DNA of 51,206 nt from Vitrella brassicaformis CCMP3155 (lineage: Eukaryota > Protista > Chromerida), in contig CDMY01000565.1 in assembly GCA_001179505.1 (NCBI GenBank), forward strand, positions 1 through 51,206, written 5' to 3'. Below the pieces are notes generated by a model. That model was not told where the DNA came from. It saw only the letters and a program-made list of their open reading frames with translations, and made no database searches. Positions 2,883 through 51,206 of this stretch are shown one piece after another (within the stretch, counting starts at the first letter, position 1; the number at the start of each line of letters is the position of its first letter). Both the position numbers and the translations under genes were made by a program.

Positions 2883-5800
2883 TGTCTGTGTGTGCCTGCG
2901 TGTACCTGCCGCAGGATGCCCATCATCGGGGTTTCACGAAGGCCGGCCTGAGTGGTCCTCTCGAGGGCTGCCTGGAGGCGCTTCAAGCACTGCAGAATGG
3001 CAGGCACCCGAACACATTGACGTGTTTGTTCAGATGGGCGCGAGAGTGTGAGGTTACCTCTTTACGGTCAGCGAGAGAGGCGTTCTGGGGAGGCAGCTGT
3101 TGTGTGAGATGCAGGTACAGCGCGCAAACCTAAACAATCACATGGACACACACACAGGGAGAGAGAGGGAGAGAGGGACGCCCGTCGTCTCCCTCTCTCG
3201 TGAGTGGATCGGATCTTCCATGTGCTCAGTCACCTCTGCCCATCTCTGCGTGCGCTTCAGCAGCTCTGCCAGGACCTCTCCGCACTTGAGCGCCTCCTTG
3301 GCGGTCCTCTGTCCGCCCGACATCATCATGGCCCACTCCAGCAGCCTGTGCTCAACCAGGGCCACAGACACCTGAAACTGCTGCTGCACACCTGCACACG
3401 AGAGAGCATCCACACAGCCATCCATCCATCCACAGACACACACAGGCATCCGCCGACTGACCGCCGAGTGTCGCGAGGATCGTCTGTGAGTCGTATGTGC
3501 CCAGCAGCTTGTCAATCGAGGCCGTTTTGAGCCGCTCGTGGGCACCCACCAGTATGGCTGACAGCACAGCGGGCTCCTGTGGACACACACACACACAAAG
3601 ACGCACACACACACGGATGGATGGATGGATGTGTGTGGGCGTGTGGTTGCCTGCAATCGGTCGGCGATTGTGAGGATGAAGATGTCGCACACGCTGTCGG
3701 GAGAGAGGCCGGTGTGTGCGAGGGTCGGCAGGCCGCTGTCAATCTGCACACACACAGGTACACACACACGTGTGTTGACCTGTGCCGCTGTGTGGGGGTG
3801 AGTGTGTGGGCACCCACCTTGTCGTTGGCGATCTGCACGCACTTGGCCCAGTTGTTGGAGTGCATGTACGTCCGCAGAGACAGGCGCAGCGCACTCTCAG
3901 CCTCCCTGCCGCCACCCACACACACACAGCTGTGTCCTCTCCGTGTGTGTGTGTCTGTGTGTGTGTGTGTGTGTGTCGGGGGTACCTGCCGTCGGTCTGT
4001 CGTGAGTTGAGCAGGTTGGTGAACCGCTCCAATGCCTCCTGGGACACATCTGTGTGTGTCATCGCACCCTGTACACATGCACAGCATCTGTGTGTCAGAG
4101 ATCTCCCTCCCCCTCCCCCTCTCCCTCTGTGAGTGTGTGTGCGTGTCTGGATGTTTGCCTGTGTGGTGGTAGCGAGGGATCTGCTGAGAGCGAGGTACAC
4201 GATGGACAAATTGCGGCCAAACAGATCGGGGCAGTACTGGTTGAGTCGTGAGCACAGCTGCACCACTCGGTTGCCGTCGTCCCCAGGATGCTGCTGCTGC
4301 TGTTGCTGCCGCCGGCCGCCGACGGGCGCGCCTTTCAGCCAACTCAGCAGCTCCTCATTGCCAATCCCGGCCTGCAAATGCATCACACACTCTCTCTCCC
4401 TCTCTGTGTCCGCCATGGATGGACGGATGGACGGATTGTGTGTACCGCTTGGAGCACGACAGCGTCGCACATGCGCATTGGGAGAGTGATGAAGTCCTCA
4501 GTGGACGCCACACGGTCGATTGGGGCATTCATCAAGACGTCCAAGTAGGGCGCAATACGCCTGCAGTGCATGGCTCTCTCTCTCTCTCTCTCTCTGTGTG
4601 TGTCTGTGTGTGGGGGAGAGGGGACCTACCTGCTGGCCCACACGCTGCTGTTGTCGTGGTGCTCTCTGGCGATGGCCTCCATCACTCCGACTGTCTGCTT
4701 CATCATGTCTGCGCAGGCAGGAACACACCCAAACCCACACCCACACCCACACGTGCAGATGAGATGGGATGTGTGTGTCCATGTGTGTTGGTACCAAGGA
4801 AGGCCACCACGCAGTCGAGCCGCAGTTTGTCGAAATACACCAGCCGTTGCTGTGCCAGTGCCACACACACAGAGGGAGGCGTGTGTGCGTCCATGCAGCT
4901 GTGTGTGTGGAGAGGCAGACGCACTTACTTACCAGCCCTTGCTGCGGCCCGGTGTATTCCATATTCTCTCTGTCGCCCCTCCCTGCTGCAGGGACGCCCT
5001 CGCGCACGTAGGACAACACAGCTGCATAGCATTGCAGACACACACACACACACAGGTGTGGGGCTGTGGTTGTGTGTGTGTGGGGGTGTGTGTGTGTGGG
5101 TACATGATAGGCTTGTGAGCAGGGAGGACAGCATGGCGCCTGGGGGGGCCAGCCGCACCTGATAAGAGAGAGAGGGAGAGAGAGCTGTGTTTGGATGCCA
5201 TGTCTGCTCTGCGCATCACTTCACTCACGCCGTCGTAGCCAAAGCAGAAGACGCAGATGGGCGTGTCCAGCAGAGGATACAGCACCTGCGAGCACAAGGC
5301 AGACAGACAGACAGACACAGACACATGTGTGTGTGTGGGTGGGTGGGTGGGTGTGTGTCCACCAGATCCACATATATCACATGAGGGTGCGTACGTGTGC
5401 CAGCCACATCACGAGCCCCTTGAACCACTTGGCGGGGGGGCGGGGGGCGTTCCTACACACACACAGACCGGTGTCATCTGCTGTCTGTCTGTCTGTCTGT
5501 CTGTCTGAGCGTGTCGATCCATCCATGCGCACATGAGTTCTGTGATTGACGCGCCTGCCTCCTCTTCGCGCGTGTAGGCGATCTCGGTGTCGTCAATGTG
5601 GAAACGGGGCCTGCACTCACACACACACACGTATGCATGAGTCAGTGCATCAGTGCATCAGTCAGTCCACACACAGAGAGGGAGAAAGAGATGCACACCC
5701 ACCTGAATGGGCGCCCTGGCGACCCTCCTAATCGGGACCTCCCTCCCTGACACACACACACACACACGTACGTGTGTCTATGTCTGTGTGAGCGTGTGTG

Positions 5801-10731: not shown

Positions 10732-11876
10732 GACTGGTATCTCGCGTTCGGGCCTATGTTGCCCAGCAAGAGGAAGATGCCGCCACTCGAGAGCTCGCCA
10801 AGGGCCTCAGGAATGGCACACTGACTCTGGAGAGGGCCACACAGTTGCTGGAAGCAAGAGCCGACGCCAAGTTCATCATGACTGACTGGGATGGGTACCG
10901 CTACAGCCTCATCCAGCTAGCGATCGAGCGTCACAAGACGGCTGACAGTCTGGACATCATCCGGCTGCTCATCGACAGAGGAGCTGATATCAACCATCGC
11001 AGCAGCTCCCCGTATCGCCCTATCGCATTTGCCCTTACCAAAGGCCGCTATGACGTCGCCCACATGCTGCTGGATGACCCCAATCTCGACATCAAGGCTG
11101 CGCATCACCTGCTGTGGCGTGTGGCAGACGACGCCCGTGACGGCAGTGTGTCATCAGCCGAGAAGCTTAGGATGGCCAAGAGGCTGATAGCGCTCGAGGC
11201 GGCAGACCAAAATCCAGATGTCCCCATCTGGCAGTTCTGCAGTCGTCCCCTCACCGACCCGTCCCACCATCTGGAGCTCATTGCCTACCTTTTCCACAAG
11301 GCCGGGCAGAGTGCCATCGGGCTCAATTCCCGGATGGAGGGCAGGAATTGGGCCCTCCTCTATCAAGCAGCTTGATCTCGGTCCTCGGATGGCGTGCTGC
11401 GGCTGCTCATGCGCAACGGGGCGGCCGTCACACGAGAATATTCTCTCTCAGGGGGGCCGCCCTTAGAAGTGCTACGGGCGGCATACCGTGACTATCTGCG
11501 CCATGACCTGCCGATGCAGGTCAGCATCGCCGTCAAAACAGCCCTCCTGCCCGCACGCGCACTGGCGACGACGGCACTGCCCGATGGCGTCATTGAGAGC
11601 ATCGAGGCGCTCATCGGCGTGGGCAGCCCGCCCGCGCTCTTCATTCCCATTGGCGAGCAGCCCTTCGGCAATCGCATCAATGAGCTGGCCAACGGCTACC
11701 TGTCTGCGGCTTACAAGTGCATTCGGCAGGCCGGCAGCAGCAGCAGCAGCAGCAGCAGCCTGGAGGGCATGGGCAGCATCGAGGGGATGGTCGACCGATA
11801 TGATGACCTGATGCGGCAGGTGCGTGAGGCTGCCAAATATGAATGTTGTCAGTTTTGCCCTTCGCCATATGAATGA
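10732..11876 (+). pseudogene. Ankyrin-repeat protein of an expanded family, interrupted by an in-frame TGA at 11373-11375
   Basis: ORFs 10545..11375 and 11394..11876 are in the same frame, separated by one TGA (LYQAA*SRSSDGVLRLLMRNGA). Ankyrin-like repeats: IIRLLIDRGADINH, PIAFALTKGRYDVAHMLL, LRLLMRNGAAV. The paralogue near 48 kb has CGA at this codon. The 5' end is uncertain. Confidence 0.65.
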
Positions 11877-17015: not shown

Positions 17016-17315
17016 NNNNNNNNNNNNNNNNNNNNNNNNNNNNNNNNNNNNNNNNNNNNNNNNNNNNNNNNNNNNNNNNNNNNNNNNNNNNNNNNNNNNN
17101 NNNNNNNNNNNNNNNNNNNNNNNNNNNNNNNNNNNNNNNNNNNNNNNNNNNNNNNNNNNNNNNNNNNNNNNNNNNNNNNNNNNNNNNNNNNNNNNNNNNN
17201 NNNNNNNNNNNNNNNNNNNNNNNNNNNNNNNNNNNNNNNNNNNNNNNNNNNNNNNNNNNNNNNNNNNNNNNNNNNNNNNNNNNNNNNNNNNNNNNNNNNN
17301 NNNNNNNNNNNNNNN
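17016..17315. other. Assembly gap (300 N)
   Basis: Run of N. Confidence 1.
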
Positions 17316-17720: not shown

Positions 17721-19616
17721 CTATCTCCTTCTTCCCGCCACCGCCACCCTCCTCCTCTGCCTCGCTCGCCGCCTGTCCGCCTCCTGGGCCGTGACGCCGA
17801 CGTAGGACCCGGTCTCTCCCAGCAGCCGCTTCTCCATCAGCCGCGGGCATTTCCTCACCCCGGCGTCCCTCTCCTCGGGCGGCAGCAGGTCGTCTATCAT
17901 CTCCACAGCCTCCCTCTGACGCTTCCTGTTGCCCGCCGCCTCCTGTGCGGTCAGCCTGGCGCAGTTCATGCCTCTCATAGTGTGGTCGATCTGCTGCTGC
18001 ATAGCTGCGATGCGCTTCGAAGCCCGCACAGGAGCGGCTTCCTCGCGGCGCCGCTTGCGGTTGCCCTGGTGGATGGCAGGAGGTGGCGCGACGGGCGCTG
18101 GGGGTGGGGGTGCCAGCCACGGGTGTGCGGAGAGCTGGTCGGCGCTGTAGCGAGAGTCGGGGTTGGGGTGCAATGCGCTGAAATGGACAAACATCAGCGA
18201 ACAGAAAGAAAGGGGGGGAATTCATGATGTCAGCATGGCATTGGCGTGTGTGTGTGGTGTGTGCGTACTGGTAGAAGAAGTCAAGCTCCTCCGGCGTGAT
18301 GTTGAGCTGCGGTCGCAGCGCCGTCATGCGCGCCGCCAGCTCGGCCTTGACCTCCTGCTCCGTCTTGTCCTGGCCACCAACCTGCCCCGGCAGGATGTCC
18401 TCCGCCTGATCGAGTGCGCCCGCGGGCCACATCCCTCCGTGCGCTCTGGGCGGGCCATACACCTCTATCATCTCCCGCAGGGCCTCAGCGTCGTTGGCCA
18501 CGTCCACCGCCTCCCCGTTGACCACCCTCTGAAACGGCGAGCGGCCGTATGAGGTCCGAAACAACGGCTGGCCCAGGGCGCTGATGTCGGCCTCGAGGCC
18601 GTACTGCAGCCCCAGCAGCACCTCCGTCGGCCGGAATCCTCGGACCCACTGCACAAGCCGACAAAACCAAGCCAATGACAGACAACGGCCATGTGTGGGC
18701 GTCGCTTTCTTGCGATTGCGTGTGTGTCTGTCTGCTTACTGCCTGCGGGTCTTTGATGGGGTTCCACGGTTCTTCCTCCGCCTTGAAGCACCCCAGGTCG
18801 ATGAGGCGCACCAGCCCACCATCCACCACCACGTTGTCCAGCTTGTGGTCGCGGTATATCACTGTATCCATCAAACACACACACACGTACACACACACGC
18901 GTGAGAAGCTTTGCAAGGAGTGATCCTGCCTTTTTCCTCTCTCCTCTATCTGATGTGGCGGCTCTCCTCACCTCCTGCCCCGTGCAGCGCCGTGTGTGCG
19001 TTGACGAGCTGCCTGCTGATGGCCTTGACCTCCTCCCGCGGCAGTCCGTCCTGTGCGTGGTCGTGCAGCTTCGTGGAGAGCGTGGGGCCGCCGTACGGCA
19101 TGATGAGGTAGGCCCTGTCCTCCTCGGGGTCCTCCACGAAGCCCAACGACGACATCACATTGGGACAGTCTTTGATGTCGGGATACTCCATGACCATATG
19201 TTCAACTGAATTAAAAAAGGATCACATTCAGCGGCAGATACGTGCATGTTTCCATGTTGACGTCGCTTACACTGGAGCACGTTGGCAAACTCGCCGCTAG
19301 TCTGCATCTACGCAAGCACAACACACCAGGCCACGTACCAGAGGAAATGAGCCATGTATGTGTATGTGTGAGACATAAGCAACGCACCCACTAATGCCCC
19401 GCTCCCTGTGCCCATGGACTGCATGCTTACCACCTTGACGACCAGTTCGGGTCCTCGGGGTATCTCCTCGGGGTTCTGGAAGCCATCGATGTGTGGCGCC
19501 TCCCCCTGTGGATTGGCACGCGCTCGCCAGGTCACTGCGAACCCGCCCGCTCCCAAATGACTGATATCATTGAAGTTGTTGACGATGAAGACCGGCAGCT
19601 GGTGAGCCTGAGCCAT
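17721..19616 (-). CDS. Ser/Thr-type protein kinase, lineage-specific family, copy K1 (apparently intact, 6 exons)
   Basis: LGAGGFAVTW (Gly loop), LVVK, EH (alphaC), YRDHKLDN, RLIDLG, GFRPTE, ADISALGQLL, ALHPNPDSRYSADQLSAHPWL, then a basic tail. All junctions are GT-AG and keep frame. Confidence 0.8.
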
Positions 19617-20590: not shown

Positions 20591-20890
20591 NNNNNNNNNN
20601 NNNNNNNNNNNNNNNNNNNNNNNNNNNNNNNNNNNNNNNNNNNNNNNNNNNNNNNNNNNNNNNNNNNNNNNNNNNNNNNNNNNNNNNNNNNNNNNNNNNN
20701 NNNNNNNNNNNNNNNNNNNNNNNNNNNNNNNNNNNNNNNNNNNNNNNNNNNNNNNNNNNNNNNNNNNNNNNNNNNNNNNNNNNNNNNNNNNNNNNNNNNN
20801 NNNNNNNNNNNNNNNNNNNNNNNNNNNNNNNNNNNNNNNNNNNNNNNNNNNNNNNNNNNNNNNNNNNNNNNNNNNNNNNNNNNNNNNNNN
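20591..20890. other. Assembly gap (300 N)
   Basis: Run of N. Confidence 1.
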
Positions 20891-23074: not shown

Positions 23075-24296
23075 TTACATACAGCTGGCCAATGGCATGC
23101 TGTGGGTAGTGTACACATTCACATTGAAACACATCCCGCCAATCCGCCCTCTCACCGCTCCCACCCCTCCTTCCCCCTCCATCCTTATCACTCTGAACAC
23201 TGGACGAATGACGCAGGAGGGGCGTGTCTCTGTGTCTTCACCGCCGTCAGAATATAAAATGTAGTCAGCGATGGATAAAGACTCAACTCCTCCGTGGATC
23301 CTTGTCTCTCTCGGCCGGAATCCCTGGACCCACTGCACAAGCCGACGGAACCAAGCCAATGAGAGACAACAGCCATGCGTGCGCGTCGCTTTCTTGCGAT
23401 TGTGTGTGTGTGTGTGTGTGTGTGTCTGCTTACTGCGTTCAGGTCTGAGGGGGCCCAGCCGTCAAACTCAACCGCCTTGTAGCACCCCAAGTCGATGAGG
23501 CGCACCACGAGCCCATCGCCCACCACCACGTTGTCCAGCTTGTGGTCGCGGTATATCACTGTACCCATCACACACACATACATACACACACACACAGACT
23601 CGTGAGAAGGTCAAGTAGTGGATTCTCCCTTGTTTCCTCTCTTCTCTATCTGATGTGGCGGCTCTCCTCACCTCCTAAGCTGTGCAGCGCCGTGTGTGCG
23701 TTGACGAGCTGGCTGCTGATCTCCCTGACCTCCTCGCGCGGCAGTCCAGTGTAGGTCAGAGGGTCTAGGCCCTGGGCTATGAAGGCCTCTCTGTGCTCCT
23801 GCAGCTTCGTGAAGAGCGTGGGGCCGCCGTACTCCATGATCAAGTAGGCCTTGTCCTCCTGGGGGTAGCTCTTGAAGCCCAACGACGACACCACATTGTC
23901 ACACTGGTCAATGGCGGGGAGCCTCATGACGGTATGCTCATCCCGGAGCATGTTGGCAAACCCGGGCTTACTCTGAAGGCACGCAAGCACAACACACCCG
24001 GCCACGTACCAGAGGAAATGAGCCATGTATGTGTATGTGTGAGACATACACAACGCACCAACTAATGCCCCGCTCTCTGTGCCCATGGATTGCATGCTTA
24101 CCATCTTGACGACCAGGTCCTCTCCTCGGTCGCGTACGTCGTCGATGTCGATGTTTTCGTCGCTATCGATGTCGTCTGCAGACCCCGCTGCATTGGCACG
24201 CGCCTGCCAGGTGTGGCCGTACTCGCCCCCTCCCAGATATCGAATAAGATTGAAGTTGTTGTCAATGAAGTGTGGAGTTTGCGGCGGGTGAGCCAT
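23075..24296 (-). pseudogene. Protein kinase copy K2, truncated after subdomain VIII
   Basis: MAHPPQTPHFIDNNFNLIRYLGGGEYGHTW..LVVKM..YRDHKLDN..LIDLG..WVQGFRP, then homology to K1/K3 stops at ~23312 and unrelated sequence follows. Confidence 0.7.
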
Positions 24297-24594
24297 GTCG
24301 TGGCCGACCAGCTGACGATTTATCAATCTCGCGTGTCAGCGGCGGCCTCTCCTCCTTGGTCGTCTCCTCGGCTGGCGAACGCCCTGGCGTATCACGGGCG
24401 CGTCAGTCTCTCGCTGGCTGCACTGCCGACTTATCTCTGTTTCTTGGCGGCATGGTGCAGGCTGTTGCGAGAAAGGAGGCTCACAGACGTGTTGGTATTG
24501 TTTGCACGGCTGTGTGGGCTGGACGGCGCGGGGCAGAGAGCGTTTCTTTGCGGCTGGCGAGGGGCTGAAGAAAGCGAGAGCCCACAGCTTCTTT

Positions 24595-24770
24595 TGCCGT
24601 CTCCCGTCTCAAATTCTCGCCAAAATGGAAATTTACTTCTCGGCGTTGCGGTGATGCAGCTCTTCTCCACATTGTGCGCCTTTCTGACGTGTGTGTTGTC
24701 GACAGGCGCCACGCGACATCTAACTGACAAAGGGAGAGAGACACTCCCGGCTTTGCTGTGCGCGAAGGCC
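24595..24770 (-). repeat. Partial copy of the kinase upstream non-coding block
   Basis: ccgtctcccgtctcaaattctcgccaaaatggaaatttacttctcgg..gcgacatctaactgaca..ggctttgctgtgcgc is shared with the 19617-20135 block and (reverse complement) the 49225-49744 block. Confidence 0.8.
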
Positions 24771-42824: not shown

Positions 42825-44542
42825 CTATCGGTCGAAGACCGTGGCTGAGATGACAGCCCCCAGCACCGCACGGGCCAGCCGAGTCGTCTCTGGGAAGCGG
42901 TCCTTGAAGGCACCAAACTTATGCACACCAGACGCAACCGACTCGAAAGTATTGACCTCCACCACCACTGCAACCAAATGACAGGAGAGGACAGCAGATG
43001 AGAGGCATTGCACCATTCACTAGCTGGGCTTGGGCTGACCAATGTTGTTCGGGGCGGGGAGGCTCCCCGAGATGCTAATCCACGCAACGAATGAGTGGCG
43101 GGCGTCTGTCAGGACGAGACGACGACAACCTACGCAGTGAATGGGGCGGTATGATGTCGTGGTGATGCATCCCTCCACTGGTGTGTGGGGCGACTGTCTC
43201 AGCAGGGTGTCCAACCGACCGTTGTCAGCATGCCTGACCAGTAAGTAAAGACAGACACACAAACAATCACTCCCGTGTCGCGACAATGCCCATACAGACT
43301 GATGCCCCACCTCGCCTGTCGACGTCACGTCTATGGGTTCTCCTGAAACGCTGGACGTGGTGAGTCCTGTCGAAGTGGTCGAGGATGATGTGTTTGACGA
43401 ACGACGACACGGATGGGTCGTCGACAGGAGCAAACAGCTGCGGCTGCCATCCCCGGCCCGAATGCGTGATCCATCTGCGGACGGGCGGGTCATGTGGCTG
43501 TCGGTGCTGCTGGTAGGTCTGGCGGGTCGGGTTGATGGTCAGCTCGTAGCCGGCCTCGTCTTTGATGGCCCGCAGTGTGGTGCACGGGAACAGCTGGAGG
43601 GTCACGCCGTCGCCGGAGTCGATGTGGGGGCCGACCATCCTGAGCTGAGCCAACACACGGGGAGCGGACAAATACGCCTGCACACACGACACACCATACG
43701 CCCATTGAGAGCCATCCTTTCTCTCCCTCCCTCCCTCGCTCCCTCGGTTGGCTTACCGTCTGGTTTGGGTATTGATGCAGATCGTCAGCGGTGAGCCTCA
43801 CCGGCAGCTGGCAGTTGCCGCACTGGTTCGCCAGCTCAATCACCTCGCCCATCGGACTCCAGCCGCCCGCCTCCGTCACGCACAGCGCCGCCAGCAGGTC
43901 ACCCACGCCCATCTGCTGCTGATCGAATGTCAGCAGCTGCACTACACGCCCATTCACCGTCCGCCACAGCCCGGCCTGTGTGCTGACTTCACGGCCCAGC
44001 CGCTGCCGCAGCTGAGGCGCTCCGAAGAGGCCCCTGGCCCAGCTGCATGTCTTCCTCAGACGCAGCACATCCCGCAGCAGAAAATCGCTGCCGCGGTGGG
44101 CGCAGACGTACCACACCGGATGCTGCTGCTGCTGCTGGGTGTGCTGGCTGGGGGCCGTCAGATCTGCCGACAGGGAGCTGCCGCCCCCCTGGTGCTGTTG
44201 CTGTGACTCTGCCGCACCCATCGAACCACCTGCAGGCACCACACAGCACAGGACGGTATGACGAGATGCAATCAACCGACAGCAGCCGGTGGTTTGCGTA
44301 CCTCCACTGTGTCCACCACGAGCAGCAGCAGCAGCAGCAGGGTCGATGTCTACGCGTCTACGCTTCTTGGCGCTGCCGTCATCAGCAGGCACCTGAACAG
44401 CGAAATACATCAATGACTTTGTGTGTCTGTGTGGGTGTGGACCTGTGCGTACCCCGTTGCTATGCTGTCTGTTGCTGTCGGTCTCATTCGGTCCCGCAGC
44501 ACCGCCCGCCCCCCACTGAGCCGCCCCGCCGTCGACATCCAT
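42825..44542 (-). CDS. Lineage-specific expanded-family protein (F-box-like motif), function unknown
   Basis: Exons MDVDGG.., VWYVCAHRGSDFLLRDVLRLRKTCSWARGLFGAPQLRQRL.., AYLSAPRVLAQLRMVGPHID.., ..VVVEVNTFESVA..FKDRFPETTRLARAVLGAVISATVFDR*, joined by GT-AG introns. Confidence 0.55.
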
Positions 44543-46177
44543 TCGCTGACATAAACACACACAGACACAGACACACAGAGGAATGACCGACTTGTGTGTG
44601 CCATCCAGTGGTCGGTGGAGCCTTACGCGTCTGTTGTGGTTAGTAGACGTCTGTGTCAGCTCACTGCTGAGGGCCGAGTGGGCGTCGGCGAGGTTCGTCA
44701 GAAGACCCAGCAGCCGGCGGCCAGCCGCCGACGCAGAAACCTGTCAACGGCAACAAACACGTGAGAGAGAGATGCGAAAGACATCTTTGTTTGACATTCC
44801 TTTTGCAGGCGGACCTGTGTGTAGTTGTGTTGACTGCGTTGGATCAGCTCCCTCGCCCGCCGAGCCGGCGCGGCCATCTCACATGCGATCTGAAGGCAAA
44901 CAAACCGGCAGGCAGCACAAAGAATGATTGATTGGTGTGTCTAGCGCCTCCCTCCCTCCCTCCCTCACCGATTGGATGTGTTCTATGACGTCTCGCAAGC
45001 TATCGTCCGACAAGTCGCCCCGCCCACCTGCACCACACACGCCATCACCACACATATACAAGACATCTGTGGGTTCATTGTGTGCGTCATCATCGCCCAC
45101 CTCTCGAGGGAGCCGGAGCGCCGTGGCTACTGTCCATCTGACCAACGCGAGCCGTCCGGGCGCTATCCGCCGCACCCAAAACCCCCAAGTCAGACCGTCA
45201 CCATCAGACCTGACAGCACACACGCCACACAGCCACGCAGGGAGGGAAGAGAATGTGTTGACCTGCCTCAGTGCCCTCGCTGATGAATGGCGCGTCGGCT
45301 CAGTGAGTGAATGAATGAATGGAGAGGTCTCACCGATGACGACGTCAGGAGGAAGTGTGGCGGAAAGCGCATTGCTATGGCTGCTGTTGTTTACTTACGC
45401 GTTGTCTCGATTGCGACTTCCTGCGTGCAGAGCCTTCTGGACAGACATACGGTTGAAACCAACCTGAAGGGCAAGTAAGCACTTGAATCGTCTGGAGAAT
45501 CAGTGGCGTCGTGTGATTCTCTCTGTCGGTCTGTCTGTCCTTCGTGTGTTTGCTTCACTACAACCAGCAGCAGCGGTTTCAGGGAGCACAGCCCCTGAAA
45601 CCGCTGGCGAGCACAGATTTGAGGGAAAACGTCGCTTTTCGTCACTGCAGTAAGAGGTCGCGTGCCTTCCTGCACGCACTCAAGAACCTCCCGCAGCAGT
45701 GACGATGGTGCGGCTGCTCTGCCCTGGCGGCCCCTGTGGATGAATGGCCTCCACAGTGCCGAGCTGGCTGAGATTGAGGCGAAGGTACGAGCTGCTGCTT
45801 GGCGACATCAAGAATGAGCTTTTCAACGTCAGGGGAGCACAGAGGTTTCATTGTTCCTATGCAGTCGCAGTCAGTCCACTGTGCTGTACAAAGAGCTCCC
45901 ACACAGACAGCTAAGCTTGGCCGGCCACTGAGGGGACACTCTAATTAATTAAACACACCACACCATCGGGCACACACAGCCACCGACCAGACCAAGCCAC
46001 TTTCACACCAAGCCAAAGGCAACCAACGACAGCACCAAACAAACAAACAGACAGACAGACAGGCAGCCAGCCGAAATACCAAAAAGATATGCACCACACG
46101 CACTCATGGACGCATTTCCCGCAACACAAACGCCCCCTCCCCACACACATGTGCGCCAGTCTGTCGAGAAAAAGTCA

Positions 46178-46258
46178 GCAAGCACGTGGCTCATCAGCCG
46201 CCCTCTCGGCCATTGGGTGACCTCTGGTGAGAGCAGCATCACGCAGCGACGCGCTCAC
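46178..46258 (-). promoter_or_regulatory. SECIS element (form II-like; GUGA core, CC apical)
   Basis: Minus strand GUGAGCGCGU-CGCUGC-GUGAU-GCUGCUCUC-ACCAGA-GGUCA-CCCAA-UGGCC-GA-GAGGGCGGC-UGAU-GAGCC-ACGUGCUUGC. By eye this gives a 10-bp helix I, a UGAU/UGAU quartet, a 9-bp helix II and a 5-bp mini-stem. It lies 79 nt downstream of the SelW stop. Confidence 0.75.
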
Positions 46259-46336
46259 GCCTCATTGCTCGCAGACAGGATGCACACGGGAGGAAGAGAG
46301 AGGGGTCGGCGGTTGGGCCGTCATCCATCTATCTGT

Positions 46337-46916
46337 CTAGCCCTTGCTGACTCTGATCCTTTCGGCGATCTTGGCGAAGACGGCCTCCTGCTGGTCTGGG
46401 TTGTCGTGCAGGAAGCCGTGGCCCTTGGTCTTCTTGGAATGAACCTGCCGCAGACCACACCACACATGGAGTATCCATAGCCACACTGCACGTGGCTCTT
46501 ACGAGTTGGCCGTCGACTGTGATCTCGAAGTTGCCCGTTGCCCCCAGGTCCTGCATGACGCACACACACAGGACAAGAGGCTTGACATGATCACATGTGT
46601 ATTGCGTGTCGTCCTCCTGACTGACCATGTTTCCCTCTATGGCCAAATCCGCATCTGGAAACCTGCCCAAGAGAAGGGCTTTCGCCGCCTGCGGAAACAA
46701 GCACACACACACACACAGGAAAGCAGCAGCAACACGTCGCCCATGCCCTGTGCTGCCTCAGCCTGCGACTCAGCTGACTTCAAACTTGGGCTTGTATCCT
46801 CAGGCCCCTGCAGGCAGCCACACACAGAGGTCACAGCTGTGCAGCCACGTGTGACAGCCTTGTCATTCATTCTTCCGTCGCTTACCGCAGAACTGAATGG
46901 CGACTTGCACCGGCAT
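46337..46916 (-). CDS. SELENOW: Selenoprotein W (Rdx family), 92 aa, Sec encoded by TGA at 46800-46802
   Basis: Exons 46916-46886, 46807-46779, 46688-46626, 46550-46503 and 46444-46337, all GT-AG, give MPVQVAIQFCGAUGYKPKFEAAKALLLGRFPDADLAIEGNMDLGATGNFEITVDGQLVHSKKTKGHGFLHDNPDQQEAVFAKIAERIRVSKG*. This carries the SelW motifs CGAUGY, TG.FE(V/I) and HSKK. Confidence 0.93.
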
Positions 46917-47064: not shown

Positions 47065-47363
47065 NNNNNNNNNNNNNNNNNNNNNNNNNNNNNNNNNNNN
47101 NNNNNNNNNNNNNNNNNNNNNNNNNNNNNNNNNNNNNNNNNNNNNNNNNNNNNNNNNNNNNNNNNNNNNNNNNNNNNNNNNNNNNNNNNNNNNNNNNNNN
47201 NNNNNNNNNNNNNNNNNNNNNNNNNNNNNNNNNNNNNNNNNNNNNNNNNNNNNNNNNNNNNNNNNNNNNNNNNNNNNNNNNNNNNNNNNNNNNNNNNNNN
47301 NNNNNNNNNNNNNNNNNNNNNNNNNNNNNNNNNNNNNNNNNNNNNNNNNNNNNNNNNNNNNNN
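47065..47363. other. Assembly gap (299 N) flanked by poly-G
   Basis: Run of N with G homopolymers on both sides. Confidence 1.
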
Positions 47364-47624
47364 NGGGGGGGGGGGGGGCCACGCGTCTGGTTTACTGCTG
47401 AAGGTGAGGACACACAGCCACACACATACCACACACAGATCTGTGCCCAATAGATCTACAGGCAGATGGACCACACAGATGTGTATGTGCTTTCAGGTTC
47501 CTCGAGATCTCTCCGCTGACTGCCCTTGGATACACACAGACACATGGGAGGTACGTCAGCCTCGCAGCACGCTACGGCACGACACACACAGCAGCACTGA
47601 CTGAACATGTATGTGGTTTGCCAG

Positions 47625-48525
47625 GCTGTTTCTCCCGTCGAGCTGTCACCCGACGGCTCGTCCACGGCATCCATCAAGGATGGCAGCCTCACGCTAGATC
47701 GGGCTACGCAACTGATTGATACGGGAGCTGACGACACCAGCGGCCTATTTCGCGCTATCGCACTTGCCCTTACCCAAGGCCGCTATGACGTCGCCCACAT
47801 GCTGCTGGATGACCCCAATCTCGACATCAAGGCTGCGCATCACCTGCTGTGGCGCGTGGCAGACGACGCACGTGACGGCAGTGTGTCGTCAGCCGAGAAG
47901 CTTGGGATGGCCAAGAGGCTGAGAGCGCTCGGGGCGGCAGACCAAAATCCATATGTCCCCATCTGGCAGTTCTGCAGTCGTCCCCTCGCCCACCCGTCCC
48001 ACCATCTGGAGCTCATTGCCTACCTTTTCCACAAGGCCGGAGGAATTGGGCCCTTCTCTATTATGCGGCTCGATCTCGGTGCTCGGATGGCGTCCTGTGG
48101 CTGCTCATGCGCAACGGGGCGGCCGTCAACGAGAATCAGGGTGGCCACCCCTAGAAGTGCTGCGGGCGGCATACCGTGAGTATCTGCAGCATGACCTGCC
48201 GATGCAGGTCAGCATCGCCGTCAAGACCGCCCTCCTGCCCGCACAAGCGCTAAAGACCACGGCACTGCCGGATGGCGTCATCGAGAGCATCGAGGCGCTC
48301 ATTGGCGTGGGTAGCCCGCCCACTGCCTGCATTCCCATTGGCGAGCAGCCCTTCGGCAATCGCATCAATGAGCTGGTCAACGGCTACCTCTCTGCGGCTT
48401 ACAAGTGCATTCGGCAGGCCAGCAGCAGCAGCAGCCGGGAGGGCATGTGTTGGGGGCCTGGCGATGTGCTGCAGGAAGTAATGGACGCCGCCAAGGAGGA
48501 GGGGCGACGGTTCGGCATCGAATGA
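47625..48525 (+). pseudogene. Ankyrin-repeat gene copy 2, frameshifted
   Basis: Closely similar to the 10732-11876 copy (LTQGRYDVAHMLLDDPNLDIKAAHHLLWRVADD..). It has a 37-nt deletion near 48040 and a second indel near 48135-48150. Confidence 0.75.
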
Positions 48526-49224: not shown

Positions 49225-49744
49225 CAAATCATCGCATGGCGTGGCCGGATGTGTGGATGTTGCTGCATGACTTTATCCATCAACGAAGAAGATGTTCGTG
49301 TCGGTCATTGTTTGGTCAGCAGATCAGCATCGTCAGTGGACCTTACTGCTGTTTCTCCCACCCCACCGCCACGAGGGCCTTCCCCCTCTCAGCCTTCGCG
49401 CAGCGCACAGCAAAGCCGGGAGTGTCTCTCCCTTTGTCAGTTAGATGTCGCGTGGCGCCTGTCGACAACACACACGTCAGAAAGAGGTGTGGCGTCCACC
49501 TGCGCACACCGATTGTCGGCACCGTGGAAGAGCGAGCAACGCCGAGAAGCAAATTTCCATTTTGGCGAGAATTTGAGACGGAGACGGCTTTCGCGAAAAT
49601 GGCGTTCTCTCTGTTCTTCGCTTCGGCCGAGTCAGCACACAGCAGAACGCACTCTCAAGCTCTCTGCTGGTTGCTTCTTTTGGGCTTCGCAAAGTCACTG
49701 TCACATCGCTTCCCCCGCATCGAGTTGTCCCTGCCTGTGCCGAG
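49225..49744 (+). repeat. Conserved non-coding block upstream of kinase K3
   Basis: Reverse-complement homologue of 19617-20135. Confidence 0.8.
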
Positions 49745-50494
49745 ATGGCTCACCCGCCGCAAGTTCCAGGCTTCATCAACAGGAACTTCGATGAGATTCG
49801 ATATTTGGGAGAGGGCGGGTTCGGGGTGGCATGGCAGGCGCATGCCAGGGAACCAGGGGACGCAGTAGAACTCGATGAAGACATCGACATCCACATCGAC
49901 GACGAACACCGAGGACCCGAGGCCGAGCTGGTCGTCAAGATGGTAAGCATGCAGTCCATGGGCACAGAGAGCGGGGCATTAGTTGGTGCGTTGTGTATGT
50001 CTCACACATACACATACATGGCTCATTTCCTCTGGTGTGTGGCCGGGTGTGTTGTGCTTGCGTTCCTGCAGAATAAGCTCGGCCAGGGGCTCCTCGACGC
50101 GCTCCAGCGTAAGCGAAGTCAACATGGAAACATGCACGTATCTGCTGCTGAATGTGATCCTTCTTCATTCAGGCGAGCATACCTTCATGGACTCCGAGAT
50201 GTTCCCCGACATCAAAGATTGTCCCAATGTGATGTCGTCCCTGGCCTTCAAGAGCTACCCCGAGGAGGGCAGGGGCTACCTGATCATGGAGTACGGCGGC
50301 CCCACGCTCTCCAGGAAGCTGTGGGACCACGCGCAGGACGGACTGCCGCGGGAGGAGGTCAAGGAGATCAGCCAGCAGCTCGTCAACGCACACAGGGCGC
50401 AGGGCAGGACCACTGGCCCAGGGAGGTGAGGAGAGCCGCCACATCAGATAGAGGAGAGAGGGAAAAAGGGAGAATCACTCCTTGACCTTCTCAC

Positions 50495-50526
<32 letters not shown>

Positions 50527-51206
50527 GTGTGATGGATACAGTGATGTATCGCGACCACAAGCTGGATAATGTGGTGGTGGATGACAATGGGCTGGTGCGC
50601 CTCATCGACCTGGGGTGCTGCAAGGTGGTGGGAGAACCGTGGAAGCTCGAAGACCTGGAAGCGTGGGTCCAGGGATTCCGGCCGACGGAGGTGCTGTTGA
50701 GGTTCGAGCCCCCTCAGCTCGAGTACGGCGTCAAGGCCGACATCAGCGCCCTGGGCCAGCTGTTGTTTCGGACCGCATACGGCCGCTCGCCGTTTCAGAG
50801 GGTGGTCAACGGGGAGGCGGTGGACGTGGCCGACGACGCTGAGGCCTTGCGGGAGATGATAGAGGTGTATGGCCCGCCCACACCGCACGGAGGGATGTGG
50901 CCCGCGGGCGCACTCCATCAGGCGGAAGAGGTCCTGCCGGGGCAGGTCGGTGGCCAGGTCAAGACGGAGCAGGAGGTCAAGGCCGAGCTGGCGGCGCGCA
51001 TGACGGCGCTGCGACCGCAGCTCAACATCACGCCGGAGGAGCTTGACTTCTTCTACAAGTACGCAGACACCACACACACACTCCAATGGCATCTCATGCA
51101 GACACCACACACACACGCCAATGGCATCTCATGCAGACATCATGAAGTCACTCCCCTTCTTTCTGTCCGCTGATGTGTGTCCATTTCAGTGCATTGCACC
51201 CCAACC
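49745..51206 (+). pseudogene. Protein kinase copy K3 (probable frameshift; runs off the window end)
   Basis: MAHPPQVPGFINRNFDEIRYLGEGGFGVAW..LVVKM..YRDHKLDN..LIDLG..GFRPTE. The exon ending at 50425 is 10 nt longer than in K1/K2 (35 vs 25 nt from the HT/HR codon), which changes splice phase. Confidence 0.65.

What the first reader, a model, noticed from the sequence alone, without database searches (positions are those of the whole stretch)
46178..46258. Doubly non-canonical SECIS (GUGA core, CC in place of apical AA) in the SelW 3' UTR
Seen (paired by eye): helix I GUGAGCGCGU/ACGUGCUUGC; internal loop; quartet UGAU (46241-46238)/UGAU (46196-46193); helix II GCUGCUCUC/GAGGGCGGC; mini-stem GGUCA/UGGCC. 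The base before UGA is G rather than A. Eleven nt after GUGA, where AA normally sits, the sequence is CC. Established: GUGA-type and CC-type SECIS variants are each known separately, and coccidian parasites have non-AUGA cores. Inference: a combined GUGA_CC_GA form could be the lineage norm and escape default SECIS patterns, so this selenoproteome may be undercounted.
Basis: partly seen in the sequence, partly recalled or inferred. Interest (0 to 1): 0.82.

Follow-up and report, generated by a model that had tools for sequence, protein, structure and literature searches.

The report
SelW SECIS hairpin lacking apical AA
The hairpin is very probably the real signal that lets the alga Vitrella read UGA as selenocysteine in its selenoprotein W mRNA. 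Its G-type core is normal for this organism, and its missing "AA" motif is a one-gene oddity, not the lineage's norm.

Summary
It lies inside the spliced selenoprotein W mRNA of Vitrella brassicaformis, 78 nt after the stop codon. It is the only SECIS-like fold in that 3'UTR. It is 100% identical in an environmental close relative whose surrounding UTR has diverged to 81-90% identity. I read it as the functional type II SECIS of SelW (confidence about 0.85).

- **GUGA core:** it is ordinary here. Seven of 12 other Vitrella SECIS I collected have it, and it is published as the majority form in green algae and sponges. This scan had already noted GUGA SECIS on other pieces of this genome.
- **Missing AA:** this is the real oddity. 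All 12 other Vitrella SECIS, and two SelW SECIS from other organisms, carry AA. So GUGA_CC is not the lineage norm.
- **"CC replaces AA":** this is unproven. In the bulge ACCAGA, the CC sits where most siblings have a 2-nt spacer. AGA sits where they have AAR, directly against the mini-stem.
- **Detection:** the published SECISearch primary motif (NTGA__CC__GA, 10-13 nt spacing) already admits this element. Rfam misses it, but it also misses or under-scores the five other Vitrella SECIS tested.

Overall it is a modestly interesting new member of a known kind.

The parts
46337..46916 (-). Selenoprotein W coding region in five exons: 46916-46886, 46807-46779, 46688-46626, 46550-46503 and 46444-46337. 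The stop codon TAG is at 46339-46337.
   Evidence: Spliced transcript contigs from three runs give four GT..AG introns. I read the sequence and frame by hand. The public 75-aa model P0001 is named selenoprotein W of Vitrella brassicaformis CCMP3155 and lacks the Sec exon.
46800..46802 (-). In-frame UGA, the putative Sec codon, in the motif C-G-A-U-G-Y (CxxU).
   Evidence: Read using the exon junctions. The reading frame after the UGA is 95-100% conserved against the relative L029, while the introns are about 75% identical.
46178..46258 (-). Whole SECIS hairpin (type II).
   Evidence: Fold. Pattern statistics. Position inside the mRNA. It is 100% identical in L029.
46249..46258 (-). Helix I, 5' strand. 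It pairs with 46187-46178.
46239..46242 (-). 5' core GUGA. The following U at 46238 completes the quartet side UGAU.
   Evidence: It matches the UGAN half of the published core (PMC3753652).
46229..46237 (-). Helix II, 5' strand (9 nt). It pairs with 46205-46197.
   Evidence: Pairing probabilities of at least 0.98.
46223..46228 (-). Apical 5' bulge ACCAGA. A11 faces A46206. CC is at 46227-46226 (positions 12-13 after UGA). AGA is at 46225-46223 (positions 14-16) and abuts the mini-stem.
   Evidence: the probability of being unpaired is 0.61-1.00 across the bulge. A minor alternative fold (24%) pairs CCA with UGG.
46208..46222 (-). Mini-stem GGUCA/UGGCC with loop CCCAA (helix III of a type II SECIS).
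   Evidence: pairing probability 0.64-0.76.
46193..46196 (-). 3' core UGAU. Its G.A/A.G tandem faces 46240-46239.
   Evidence: It fits the KGAW half of the published core (PMC3753652).
46178..46187 (-). Helix I, 3' strand.
46173..46263 (-). A 91-nt block identical to the environmental relative, bounded on each side by a substitution (46264 and 46172).
45804..46336 (-). 3'UTR as covered by transcript contigs. Two contigs end at 45804 and 45808. A third runs on past 45600.
   Evidence: Contigs cannot prove a poly(A) site.

Best explanation
This is the functional type II SECIS element of the Vitrella brassicaformis selenoprotein W mRNA.

**Proposed mechanism (inferred from the established eukaryotic SECIS mechanism, not tested here)**
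- The UGAU/UGAU quartet forms the kink-turn that is bound by SBP2.
- SBP2 recruits eEFSec carrying Sec-tRNA(Sec), so the UGA at 46802-46800 is read as selenocysteine.

**How each feature should be read**
- The G before UGA is this organism's usual core form.
- The element is exceptional only in its apical bulge, ACCAGA, which has no AA.
- By position, AGA (positions 14-16, abutting the mini-stem) corresponds to the AAR motif of the other SECIS. The CC (positions 12-13) sits where most of the others have a 2-nt spacer.
- I therefore read it as an AAR-to-AGA variant with a C-rich spacer (about 60%) rather than a true CC-type SECIS (about 40%).

**Shown:** the structure, its place in the mRNA, its uniqueness in the UTR, its sequence conservation, and the presence of tRNA-Sec in the genome.

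**Inferred:** protein binding, Sec insertion, and which bulge bases matter.
For: - **In the mRNA:** spliced contigs from three runs run unbroken from exon 5 through the hairpin to 45804, 45808 or beyond.
- **Context:** there is an in-frame UGA in a CxxU motif. The post-UGA frame is 95-100% identical to relative L029, against about 75% for the introns. So translation past the UGA is under selection and a SECIS is needed.
- **Uniqueness:** it is the only candidate with a SECIS-like helix II among 27 UGA...GA pairings in 46345-45560. The full pattern occurs once per window, against 0.033 in shuffles.
- **Conservation:** there are no differences in 81 nt (91 nt in all), while the rest of the 3'UTR carries 23 substitutions and about 6 indel events in about 442 nt. 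The chance of an event-free 81-nt block is about 0.004.
- **Alternative register excluded:** the substitution at 46264 destroys an upstream AUGA in the relative.
- **Machinery:** tRNA-Sec with anticodon TCA is at C270:128036-128121 (71.6 bits).
- **Family context:** I collected 12 other SECIS near GPx, deiodinase-like, Rdx and SelU-like genes, 7 with GUGA and 5 with AUGA. Helix II covaries across seven of them.
- **AGA reading:** AA starts at position 14 in 6 of the 12, and in both foreign SelW SECIS (L036/L037; L052). In the Vitrella set it lies 0-1 nt from the mini-stem, exactly where SelW has AGA.
Against: - **No assay:** no biochemical or proteomic evidence of Sec insertion was available.
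- **Weak model score:** a lineage model built without SelW (R3) scores the hairpin only 12.6 bits (E 0.52, rank 3 in the window). The model is weak, with 7 seeds and only helix II as structure.
- **Rfam:** the SECIS models give no hit, even at E up to 10.
- **Fold stability:** the z-score is only -2.0.
- **No covariation:** the single close relative is identical, so there are no compensatory changes.
- **Against the AGA reading:** CC lies at an allowed spacing of 11 nt, the same spacing as the AAAA of the deiodinase-like gene on C255. Cs are the only published substitute for As in the apical motif (PMC2761289, PMC3328465).
Confidence: 0.85

Rival explanations
1. It is a true CC-type SECIS. The two unpaired Cs, 11 nt after GUGA, do the job of the apical AA, as in vertebrate SelM, SelO and TXNRD3. 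The following AGA would then be only a linker to the mini-stem.
For: - CC is at a spacing of 11 nt, with 30 nt on to the 3' GA. Both lie inside the published NTGA__CC__GA windows of 10-13 and 15-39 nt (PMC2375036).
- Cs are the only documented replacement for the apical As (PMC2761289, PMC3328465, PMC3753652).
- One Vitrella SECIS (C255) has its A-run starting at the same position, 12.
- The Cs are mostly unpaired, with probabilities of 0.61 and 0.73.
Against: - In 6 of 12 Vitrella SECIS and both foreign SelW SECIS the AA starts at position 14. The two positions before it are a variable spacer (UC, AC, UG, GC, UU).
- In the Vitrella set the AA(R) abuts the mini-stem, and in SelW that place is taken by AGA.
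- No other Vitrella SECIS uses CC.
Confidence: 0.35
2. The hairpin is not the SECIS. It would be a stable UTR structure with another role or none. SelW's UGA would then be served by an element elsewhere, or would simply terminate translation after 12 residues.
For: - There is no Rfam hit.
- The score with the lineage model is not significant.
- AA is absent.
- No functional data exist.
Against: - No other SECIS-like fold exists in the transcribed 3'UTR.
- The post-UGA reading frame is conserved well above intron level.
- The hairpin has every other SECIS feature at the right spacing, with chance expectation of about 2e-4 per UTR.
- It is the one invariant block of the UTR.
Confidence: 0.08
3. 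It is a deliberately weak or regulated SECIS. The AA-less bulge would lower recoding efficiency, tuning SelW output or making it more sensitive to selenium supply.
For: - Human SECIS elements span a more than 1000-fold range of activity. Two of the three human CC-type elements (SelO, TXNRD3) are in the weakest group (PMC2761289).
- SelW transcript contigs are well represented in the RNA-like runs, although contig depth is a poor measure of expression.
Against: This is speculative, with no expression or efficiency data here. Perfect conservation fits any functional reading equally well.
Confidence: 0.15

Closest known systems
GUGA_AA SECIS of green algae (Chlamydomonas, Ostreococcus) and the sponge Amphimedon
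   Same: Both have G instead of A before the UGA quartet, a type II form with a mini-stem, and a 3'UTR location (PMC2375036, PMC3473315). Seven of 12 other Vitrella SECIS have exactly this form.
   Different: Those elements keep the unpaired AA. The SelW element has ACCAGA with no AA.
CC-type SECIS of vertebrate SelM, SelO and TXNRD3
   Same: Both lack AA in the apical region and have unpaired CC within 10-13 nt of the core (PMC2761289, PMC2375036).
   Different: The vertebrate elements have AUGA cores. Here the CC occupies what is a spacer position in sibling elements and is followed by AGA at the AAR position, so equivalence is not established.
Other Vitrella brassicaformis SECIS elements (GPx C249 and C488; deiodinase-like C768, C255, C603, C386 x2 and C638; Rdx C366; SelU-like C635; C573; C227)
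   Same: They share the same core (UGAN with GA opposite), a helix II of 9-11 bp, a mini-stem, and short internal loops. The 5' half of the SelW element aligns without gaps to the GPx element: helix at positions 2-11, spacer at 12-13, motif at 14-16, mini-stem from 17.
   Different: All 12 have AA(A/G/C/U). SelW alone does not.
SelW SECIS of other protists from metagenomes (L036/L037, L052)
   Same: They serve homologous proteins (66-69% identity over the last exon) and the apical motif sits at the same place, position 14.
   Different: They have AUGA cores and a canonical AA. One is type I. So the AA-less form arose within the Vitrella lineage.

Membership tests
Eukaryotic SECIS element | Lies in the 3'UTR of an mRNA with an in-frame UGA at a known Sec position | tested here: met
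   Spliced contigs cover the CDS and the hairpin in one transcript. The UGA sits in the CxxU motif of SelW.
Eukaryotic SECIS element | Core quartet UGAN/KGAW with tandem G.A/A.G | tested here: met
   UGAU at 46241-46238 faces UGAU at 46196-46193. The consensus is from PMC3753652. The non-Watson-Crick geometry itself cannot be tested in silico.
Eukaryotic SECIS element | Helix I and helix II of proper length flanking the core | tested here: met
   Helix I is 10 bp. Helix II is 9 bp plus an A.A.
Eukaryotic SECIS element | Unpaired AA (AAR) 10-13 nt after the core | tested here: not met
   Positions 11-16 read ACCAGA, with no AA.
Eukaryotic SECIS element | Alternative accepted motif: unpaired CC 10-13 nt after the core and 15-39 nt before the 3' GA | tested here: met
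   CC lies after 11 nt, and 30 nt come before the GA. The criterion is quoted from PMC2375036. The Cs are mostly unpaired.
Eukaryotic SECIS element | Scores above the curated threshold of Rfam SECIS models | tested here: not met
   No hit at E up to 10. This is not specific to SelW. Of five other Vitrella SECIS tested, only the two GPx elements hit (29.3 and 25.8 bits, below the cut-off of 35). The three others give nothing.
Eukaryotic SECIS element | Conserved in orthologues | tested here: inconclusive
   It is identical in one close environmental relative against a diverged UTR. No intermediate-distance orthologue with a 3'UTR was recovered. Distant SelW homologues have AA-type SECIS.
Eukaryotic SECIS element | Binds SBP2 and directs Sec insertion | not testable with these tools
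   This needs a reporter or binding assay.
CC-type SECIS (SelM/SelO/TXNRD3 form) | CC occupies the structural position of the apical AA | tested here: inconclusive
   The spacing is allowed. However, positional alignment with 12 sibling SECIS puts the CC at the spacer and AGA at the AAR site.
GUGA-type SECIS (algal/sponge form) | G directly before the UGA quartet, with AA retained | tested here: not met
   The G is present at 46242, but AA is absent.

The most novel reading that the evidence does not exclude
The chromerid Sec machinery may accept a third kind of apical motif. This would be an A-G-A bulge at the AAR position, perhaps helped by the neighbouring Cs. It would mean that the 'AA or CC' rule built into SECIS finders is too narrow for some protists, and that a few AA-less selenoprotein genes are being missed.
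Probability: 0.25. Interest if true: 0.5.

Novelty: new member of a known kind. Interest (0 to 1): 0.3.

Why it matters
- **Annotation:** the result confirms that the public Vitrella SelW model (75 aa, no Sec exon) is wrong, and it shows where the recoding signal lies.
- **Detection in this lineage:** GUGA cores are normal in a chromerid, a relative of apicomplexan parasites. Rfam's SECIS models put every Vitrella SECIS I tested below threshold. Rfam-based annotation will therefore undercount selenoproteins here, whatever the apical motif.
- **A natural test case:** the single AA-less element could be used to ask what the apical AAR motif needs in order to work. The role of that motif is still poorly understood.
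- **Limits:** it does not reveal a new recoding mechanism.

Tried and rejected
- **Rfam:** cmscan on the window and on small loci found no SECIS hit for SelW.
- **RF00031 on the whole genome:** it found only one GPx SECIS (29.3 bits) and one doubtful hit.
- **Models R1 and R2:** I built two covariance models from the near-identical GPx pair. They were too sequence-specific to find other SECIS. Two of the three model builds were wasted this way.
- **Alignment for R3:** MAFFT could not produce a structure-consistent alignment of all eight SECIS. I pre-screened inputs locally. The tool's alignments were reproduced by 'mafft --auto --thread 1'. I settled on 7 sequences, with one row (DI C255) misaligned on its 3' side, and annotated only helix II.
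- **R3 results:** the model is weak. The SelW hairpin scored 12.6 bits, E 0.52. The genome scan scored only 150 of 21,491 first-look candidates, so it is not a census.
- **Pfam searches of the genome:** SelK (PF10961) gave nothing. Sep15/SelM (PF08806) gave one weak, uninformative hit. AhpC-TSA_2 (PF13911) gave one weak hit, which did lead to the SelU-like SECIS on C635. Short exons limit this approach. The Rdx search even missed the SelW gene itself.
- **Spliced protein not searched:** Only exon 5 (by reference) and the stored public model P0001 were used as queries.
- **Relatives without a usable SECIS:**
  - The contig of the 81%-identical relative P0003 (L030) ends 30 nt after the stop.
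  - The contig for P0012 could not be read.
  - L033 has only about 50 nt after the stop.
  - My scanners found no convincing SECIS on L031, L032, L034, L035, L038, L053 or L054, and only a doubtful candidate on L055.
- **Alternative registers rejected:** the upstream AUGA at 46265 paired with UGAC at 46177 has the wrong geometry and is not conserved in L029. The AUGA at 46194 overlaps the 3' core and has no apical motif.
- **Window hits to R3:** the hits at 18285-18333 and 50994-51042 lie in duplicated coding sequence and are not SECIS.
- **Literature:** no paper in the library combines Vitrella with selenoprotein, or Chromera with both selenoproteins and SECIS.

Full report
**What is in the sequence**

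On the minus strand the window carries a five-exon selenoprotein W gene.
- Spliced transcript contigs from three public runs define four GT..AG introns. The exons are 46916-46886, 46807-46779, 46688-46626, 46550-46503 and 46444-46337 (sequence).
- The second exon holds an in-frame UGA at 46802-46800, in the motif C-G-A-U-G-Y. The stop codon TAG is at 46339-46337.
- The same contigs run without a break from exon 5 down to 45804 or 45808, and one runs further. The hairpin at 46258-46178 therefore lies inside the mRNA, starting 78 nt after the stop.
Contigs cannot fix a poly(A) site.
- The genome is Vitrella brassicaformis. It has 72.7 Mb in 1064 contigs. The protein database names the public model, on a contig of exactly 51,206 nt, as Vitrella brassicaformis CCMP3155 selenoprotein W. 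Earlier notes of this scan say the same.
- That public model (P0001, 75 aa) starts downstream of the UGA and lacks the Sec exon.

**The observation**

- Helix I: 46258-46249 with 46187-46178, 10 bp, three of them G.U.
- Core: GUGA at 46242-46239, with UGAU (46241-46238) facing UGAU (46196-46193). This fits the published UGAN/KGAW core (PMC3753652).
- Helix II: nine contiguous pairs, with pairing probability of at least 0.98.
- 5' bulge: ACCAGA at 46228-46223.
- Mini-stem: GGUCA/UGGCC with loop CCCAA.

The minimum free energy is -42.9 kcal/mol. Its z-score is only -2.0, so stability alone is not impressive.

The combined pattern is much rarer. I required R-UGA, one base, nine contiguous pairs, one base, GA, plus an 8-bp helix I. 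That pattern occurs once in both strands of the window, at this site. It occurs 0.033 times per dinucleotide-shuffled window. The expectation for a 533-nt UTR is about 2e-4.

I enumerated 27 UGA...GA pairings across 46345-45560. Only this one has a SECIS-like helix II. There is no canonical SECIS elsewhere in the UTR.

**Conservation**

I searched the exon-5 peptide by reference.
- The search found an 83-aa product on an ENA metagenome contig (L029) that is 94% identical over the query.
- L029 is a close relative of Vitrella. Exons 3-5 are 95-100% identical, introns 74-76%, and the 3'UTR outside the hairpin 81-90%.
- That UTR carries 23 substitutions and about six indel events in about 442 nt.
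- The 81-nt hairpin has no difference at all. The identical block spans 91 nt (46263-46173), with a substitution immediately on each side.
- At the UTR's event rate, an event-free 81-nt block has a probability of about 0.004.
- The substitution at 46264 turns an upstream AAUGAGG into AACGAGG in the relative. That removes the only alternative AUGA register.
- Because the two copies are identical, there is no covariation evidence.
- The reading frame after the UGA is kept well above intron level. This argues that ribosomes read through the UGA, and so that a SECIS is needed.
- The genome encodes tRNA-Sec: Rfam 71.6 bits against a cut-off of 47, and ARAGORN reports anticodon TCA.

**How the element compares with other SECIS of the same genome**

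I located other selenoprotein genes by Pfam searches of the genome. I scanned their flanks with rigid and fold-based scanners. I then searched the genome with a covariance model built without SelW (R3). This gave 12 further SECIS.

| Element | Core | Apical motif and start position after UGA |
|---|---|---|
| GPx C249 | AUGA | AAA at 14 |
| GPx C488 | AUGA | AAA at 14 |
| Rdx-family C366 | GUGA | AA at 14 |
| Deiodinase-like C768 | GUGA | AAA at 13 |
| Deiodinase-like C255 | AUGA | AAAA at 12 |
| Deiodinase-like C603 | GUGA | AAA at 14 |
| SelU-like C635 | GUGA | AAG at 14 |
| C573 | AUGA | AA at 13 |
| Deiodinase-like C386, first of tandem pair | GUGA | AA at 17 |
| Deiodinase-like C386, second of tandem pair | GUGA | AA at 17 |
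| Deiodinase-like C638 (paralogue of C386) | GUGA | AA at 17 |
| C227 (probable) | AUGA | AA at 14 |

- Helix II covaries strongly across seven of them: 82.6% of cells are paired against 54% in shuffles, and 9 of 10 pairs change on both sides.
- The tally is GUGA 7, AUGA 5.
- All 12 have AA. None has CC in its place.
- The G before UGA is therefore this organism's commoner form. It is also published as the majority form in Chlamydomonas, Ostreococcus and a sponge (PMC3473315, PMC2375036).
- This scan had already noted GUGA SECIS on other pieces of this genome.
- The sample is not a census. R3 is weak, and the genome scan scored only 150 of 21,491 candidates.

**Is CC really 'in place of AA'?**

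Counting from the A of UGA, the SelW element reads:
- U1;
- helix II at positions 2-10;
- A11, facing an A;
- C12 and C13;
- A14, G15 and A16;
- the mini-stem from position 17.

The GPx elements read:
- U1;
- helix II at positions 2-11;
- U12 and C13;
- A14, A15 and A16;
- the mini-stem from position 17.

This is the same geometry without a single gap.

Evidence that AGA is the counterpart of AAR:
- In six of the 12 siblings, AA starts at position 14, after a variable 2-nt spacer (UC, AC, UG, GC).
- Two SelW SECIS from other organisms show the same pattern: L036/L037 (AUGA, type I) and L052 (AUGA, type II; spacer UU).
- In the Vitrella set, the AA(R) lies 0-1 nt from the mini-stem.
- By position from both sides, the SelW counterpart of AAR is therefore AGA, and the CC sits in the spacer.

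Evidence that CC is the counterpart:
- CC at a spacing of 11 nt is within the accepted 10-13 nt window.
- It matches the start of the A-run in the C255 element.
- Cs are the only documented substitute for the apical As, in human SelM, SelO and TXNRD3 (PMC2761289; also PMC3328465 and PMC3753652).
- The Cs are mostly unpaired, with probabilities of 0.61 and 0.73. A 24% alternative fold pairs CCA with UGG.

Sequence alone cannot decide. I lean about 60:40 to the AGA reading. Either way, the firm statement is that this SECIS has no AA and is the only one of 13 in the sample without it.

**Would it escape standard detection?**
- The SECISearch primary step is published as NTGA__AA__GA or NTGA__CC__GA, with any base before UGA. 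It allows 10-13 nt from the quartet to the motif and 15-39 nt from the motif to GA (PMC2375036). The SelW element has 11 and 30 nt, so it passes that filter. I could not run SECISearch3 itself.
- Rfam does miss it, but not because of the GUGA plus CC combination.
- I tested five other Vitrella SECIS in the same way. Only the two AUGA GPx elements were reported, at 29.3 and 25.8 bits, under the 35-bit cut-off. The GUGA_AA elements and the AUGA element of C255 were not reported at all.
- The whole-genome RF00031 search found one GPx element and one doubtful hit.
- The worry about undercounting therefore holds for Rfam-style annotation of this lineage in general.

**Verdict**

This is most probably the working SECIS of Vitrella SelW (about 0.85).
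- The mechanism is the standard one: a kink-turn core bound by SBP2, then recruitment of eEFSec with Sec-tRNA(Sec). I infer it from the family and did not test it.
- 'Doubly non-canonical' overstates the case, because only the apical bulge is unusual.
- 'Lineage norm' is refuted by the sample.
- The AA-less bulge is shared only with a very close relative. More distant SelW homologues have AA, so it is a recent, gene-specific variant.
- It is a new member of a known kind. Its modest interest is as a natural probe of what the apical motif requires.

Noticed in passing
window 49251-51092 vs 20121-18235 (inverted); 47750-48435 vs 11015-11747 (direct); partial third copy at 23471-24763: Segmental duplications inside the window, at 83-96% identity. 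They include coding-looking sequence, and they produced two identical spurious hits to the SECIS model.
   Followed up: partly
window 47065-47364 (also 17016-17315 and 20591-20890): Three 300-nt runs of N. The run at 47065-47364 is flanked by homopolymer tracts and begins about 50 nt upstream of the 5' end of the SelW transcript contigs (47014). The promoter and true 5' end of SelW are therefore not assembled.
   Followed up: no
window 46337-46916 minus strand; protein P0001: The public Vitrella SelW model (75 aa, starting MGDAAKALL...) begins after the UGA and omits the Sec-containing exons. The transcript contigs support a start at 46916 and a CxxU motif.
   Followed up: partly
G000:C386:42800-42859 and 43199-43258 (minus strand; loci L047, L048); paralogue at G000:C638, L016 about 2975-3047 (minus strand): Two similar GUGA-type SECIS about 400 nt apart, downstream of one deiodinase-like gene. 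The paralogous gene on C638 has a single copy. All three have a longer, bulged helix II with AA at position 17.
   Followed up: partly
G000:C573:38366-38418 (minus strand; L046 1501-1553): A well-formed AUGA_AA SECIS with a strong helix I (32.8 bits with R3). It lies just downstream of a glycine-rich ORF that could be a SelK/SelS-like gene. The gene was not identified.
   Followed up: no
G000:C270:128036-128121 (minus strand; L056 1500-1586): tRNA-Sec gene with anticodon TCA. It scores 71.6 bits against Rfam RF01852.
   Followed up: yes
L029 (ENA ERZ893784, contig k147_217483): An environmental metagenome contig from a close relative of Vitrella brassicaformis. SelW exons are 95-100% identical, introns about 75%. 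It suggests an uncultured sister strain or species.
   Followed up: partly
L031 and L032 (JGI 3300031057 and 3300031128): AT-rich contigs (GC 26-28% downstream of the gene) with a complete SelW ORF. Its Sec UGA was translated as W by the gene caller (CGGWGY in P0008). My scanners found no convincing SECIS.
   Followed up: no
L023-L028 (Vitrella SECIS loci): Rfam SECIS_1 reports only the two AUGA GPx elements, both below its gathering score. It reports none of the GUGA elements, nor the AUGA element of C255. Rfam-based annotation would miss the selenoprotein signals of this genome.
   Followed up: yes
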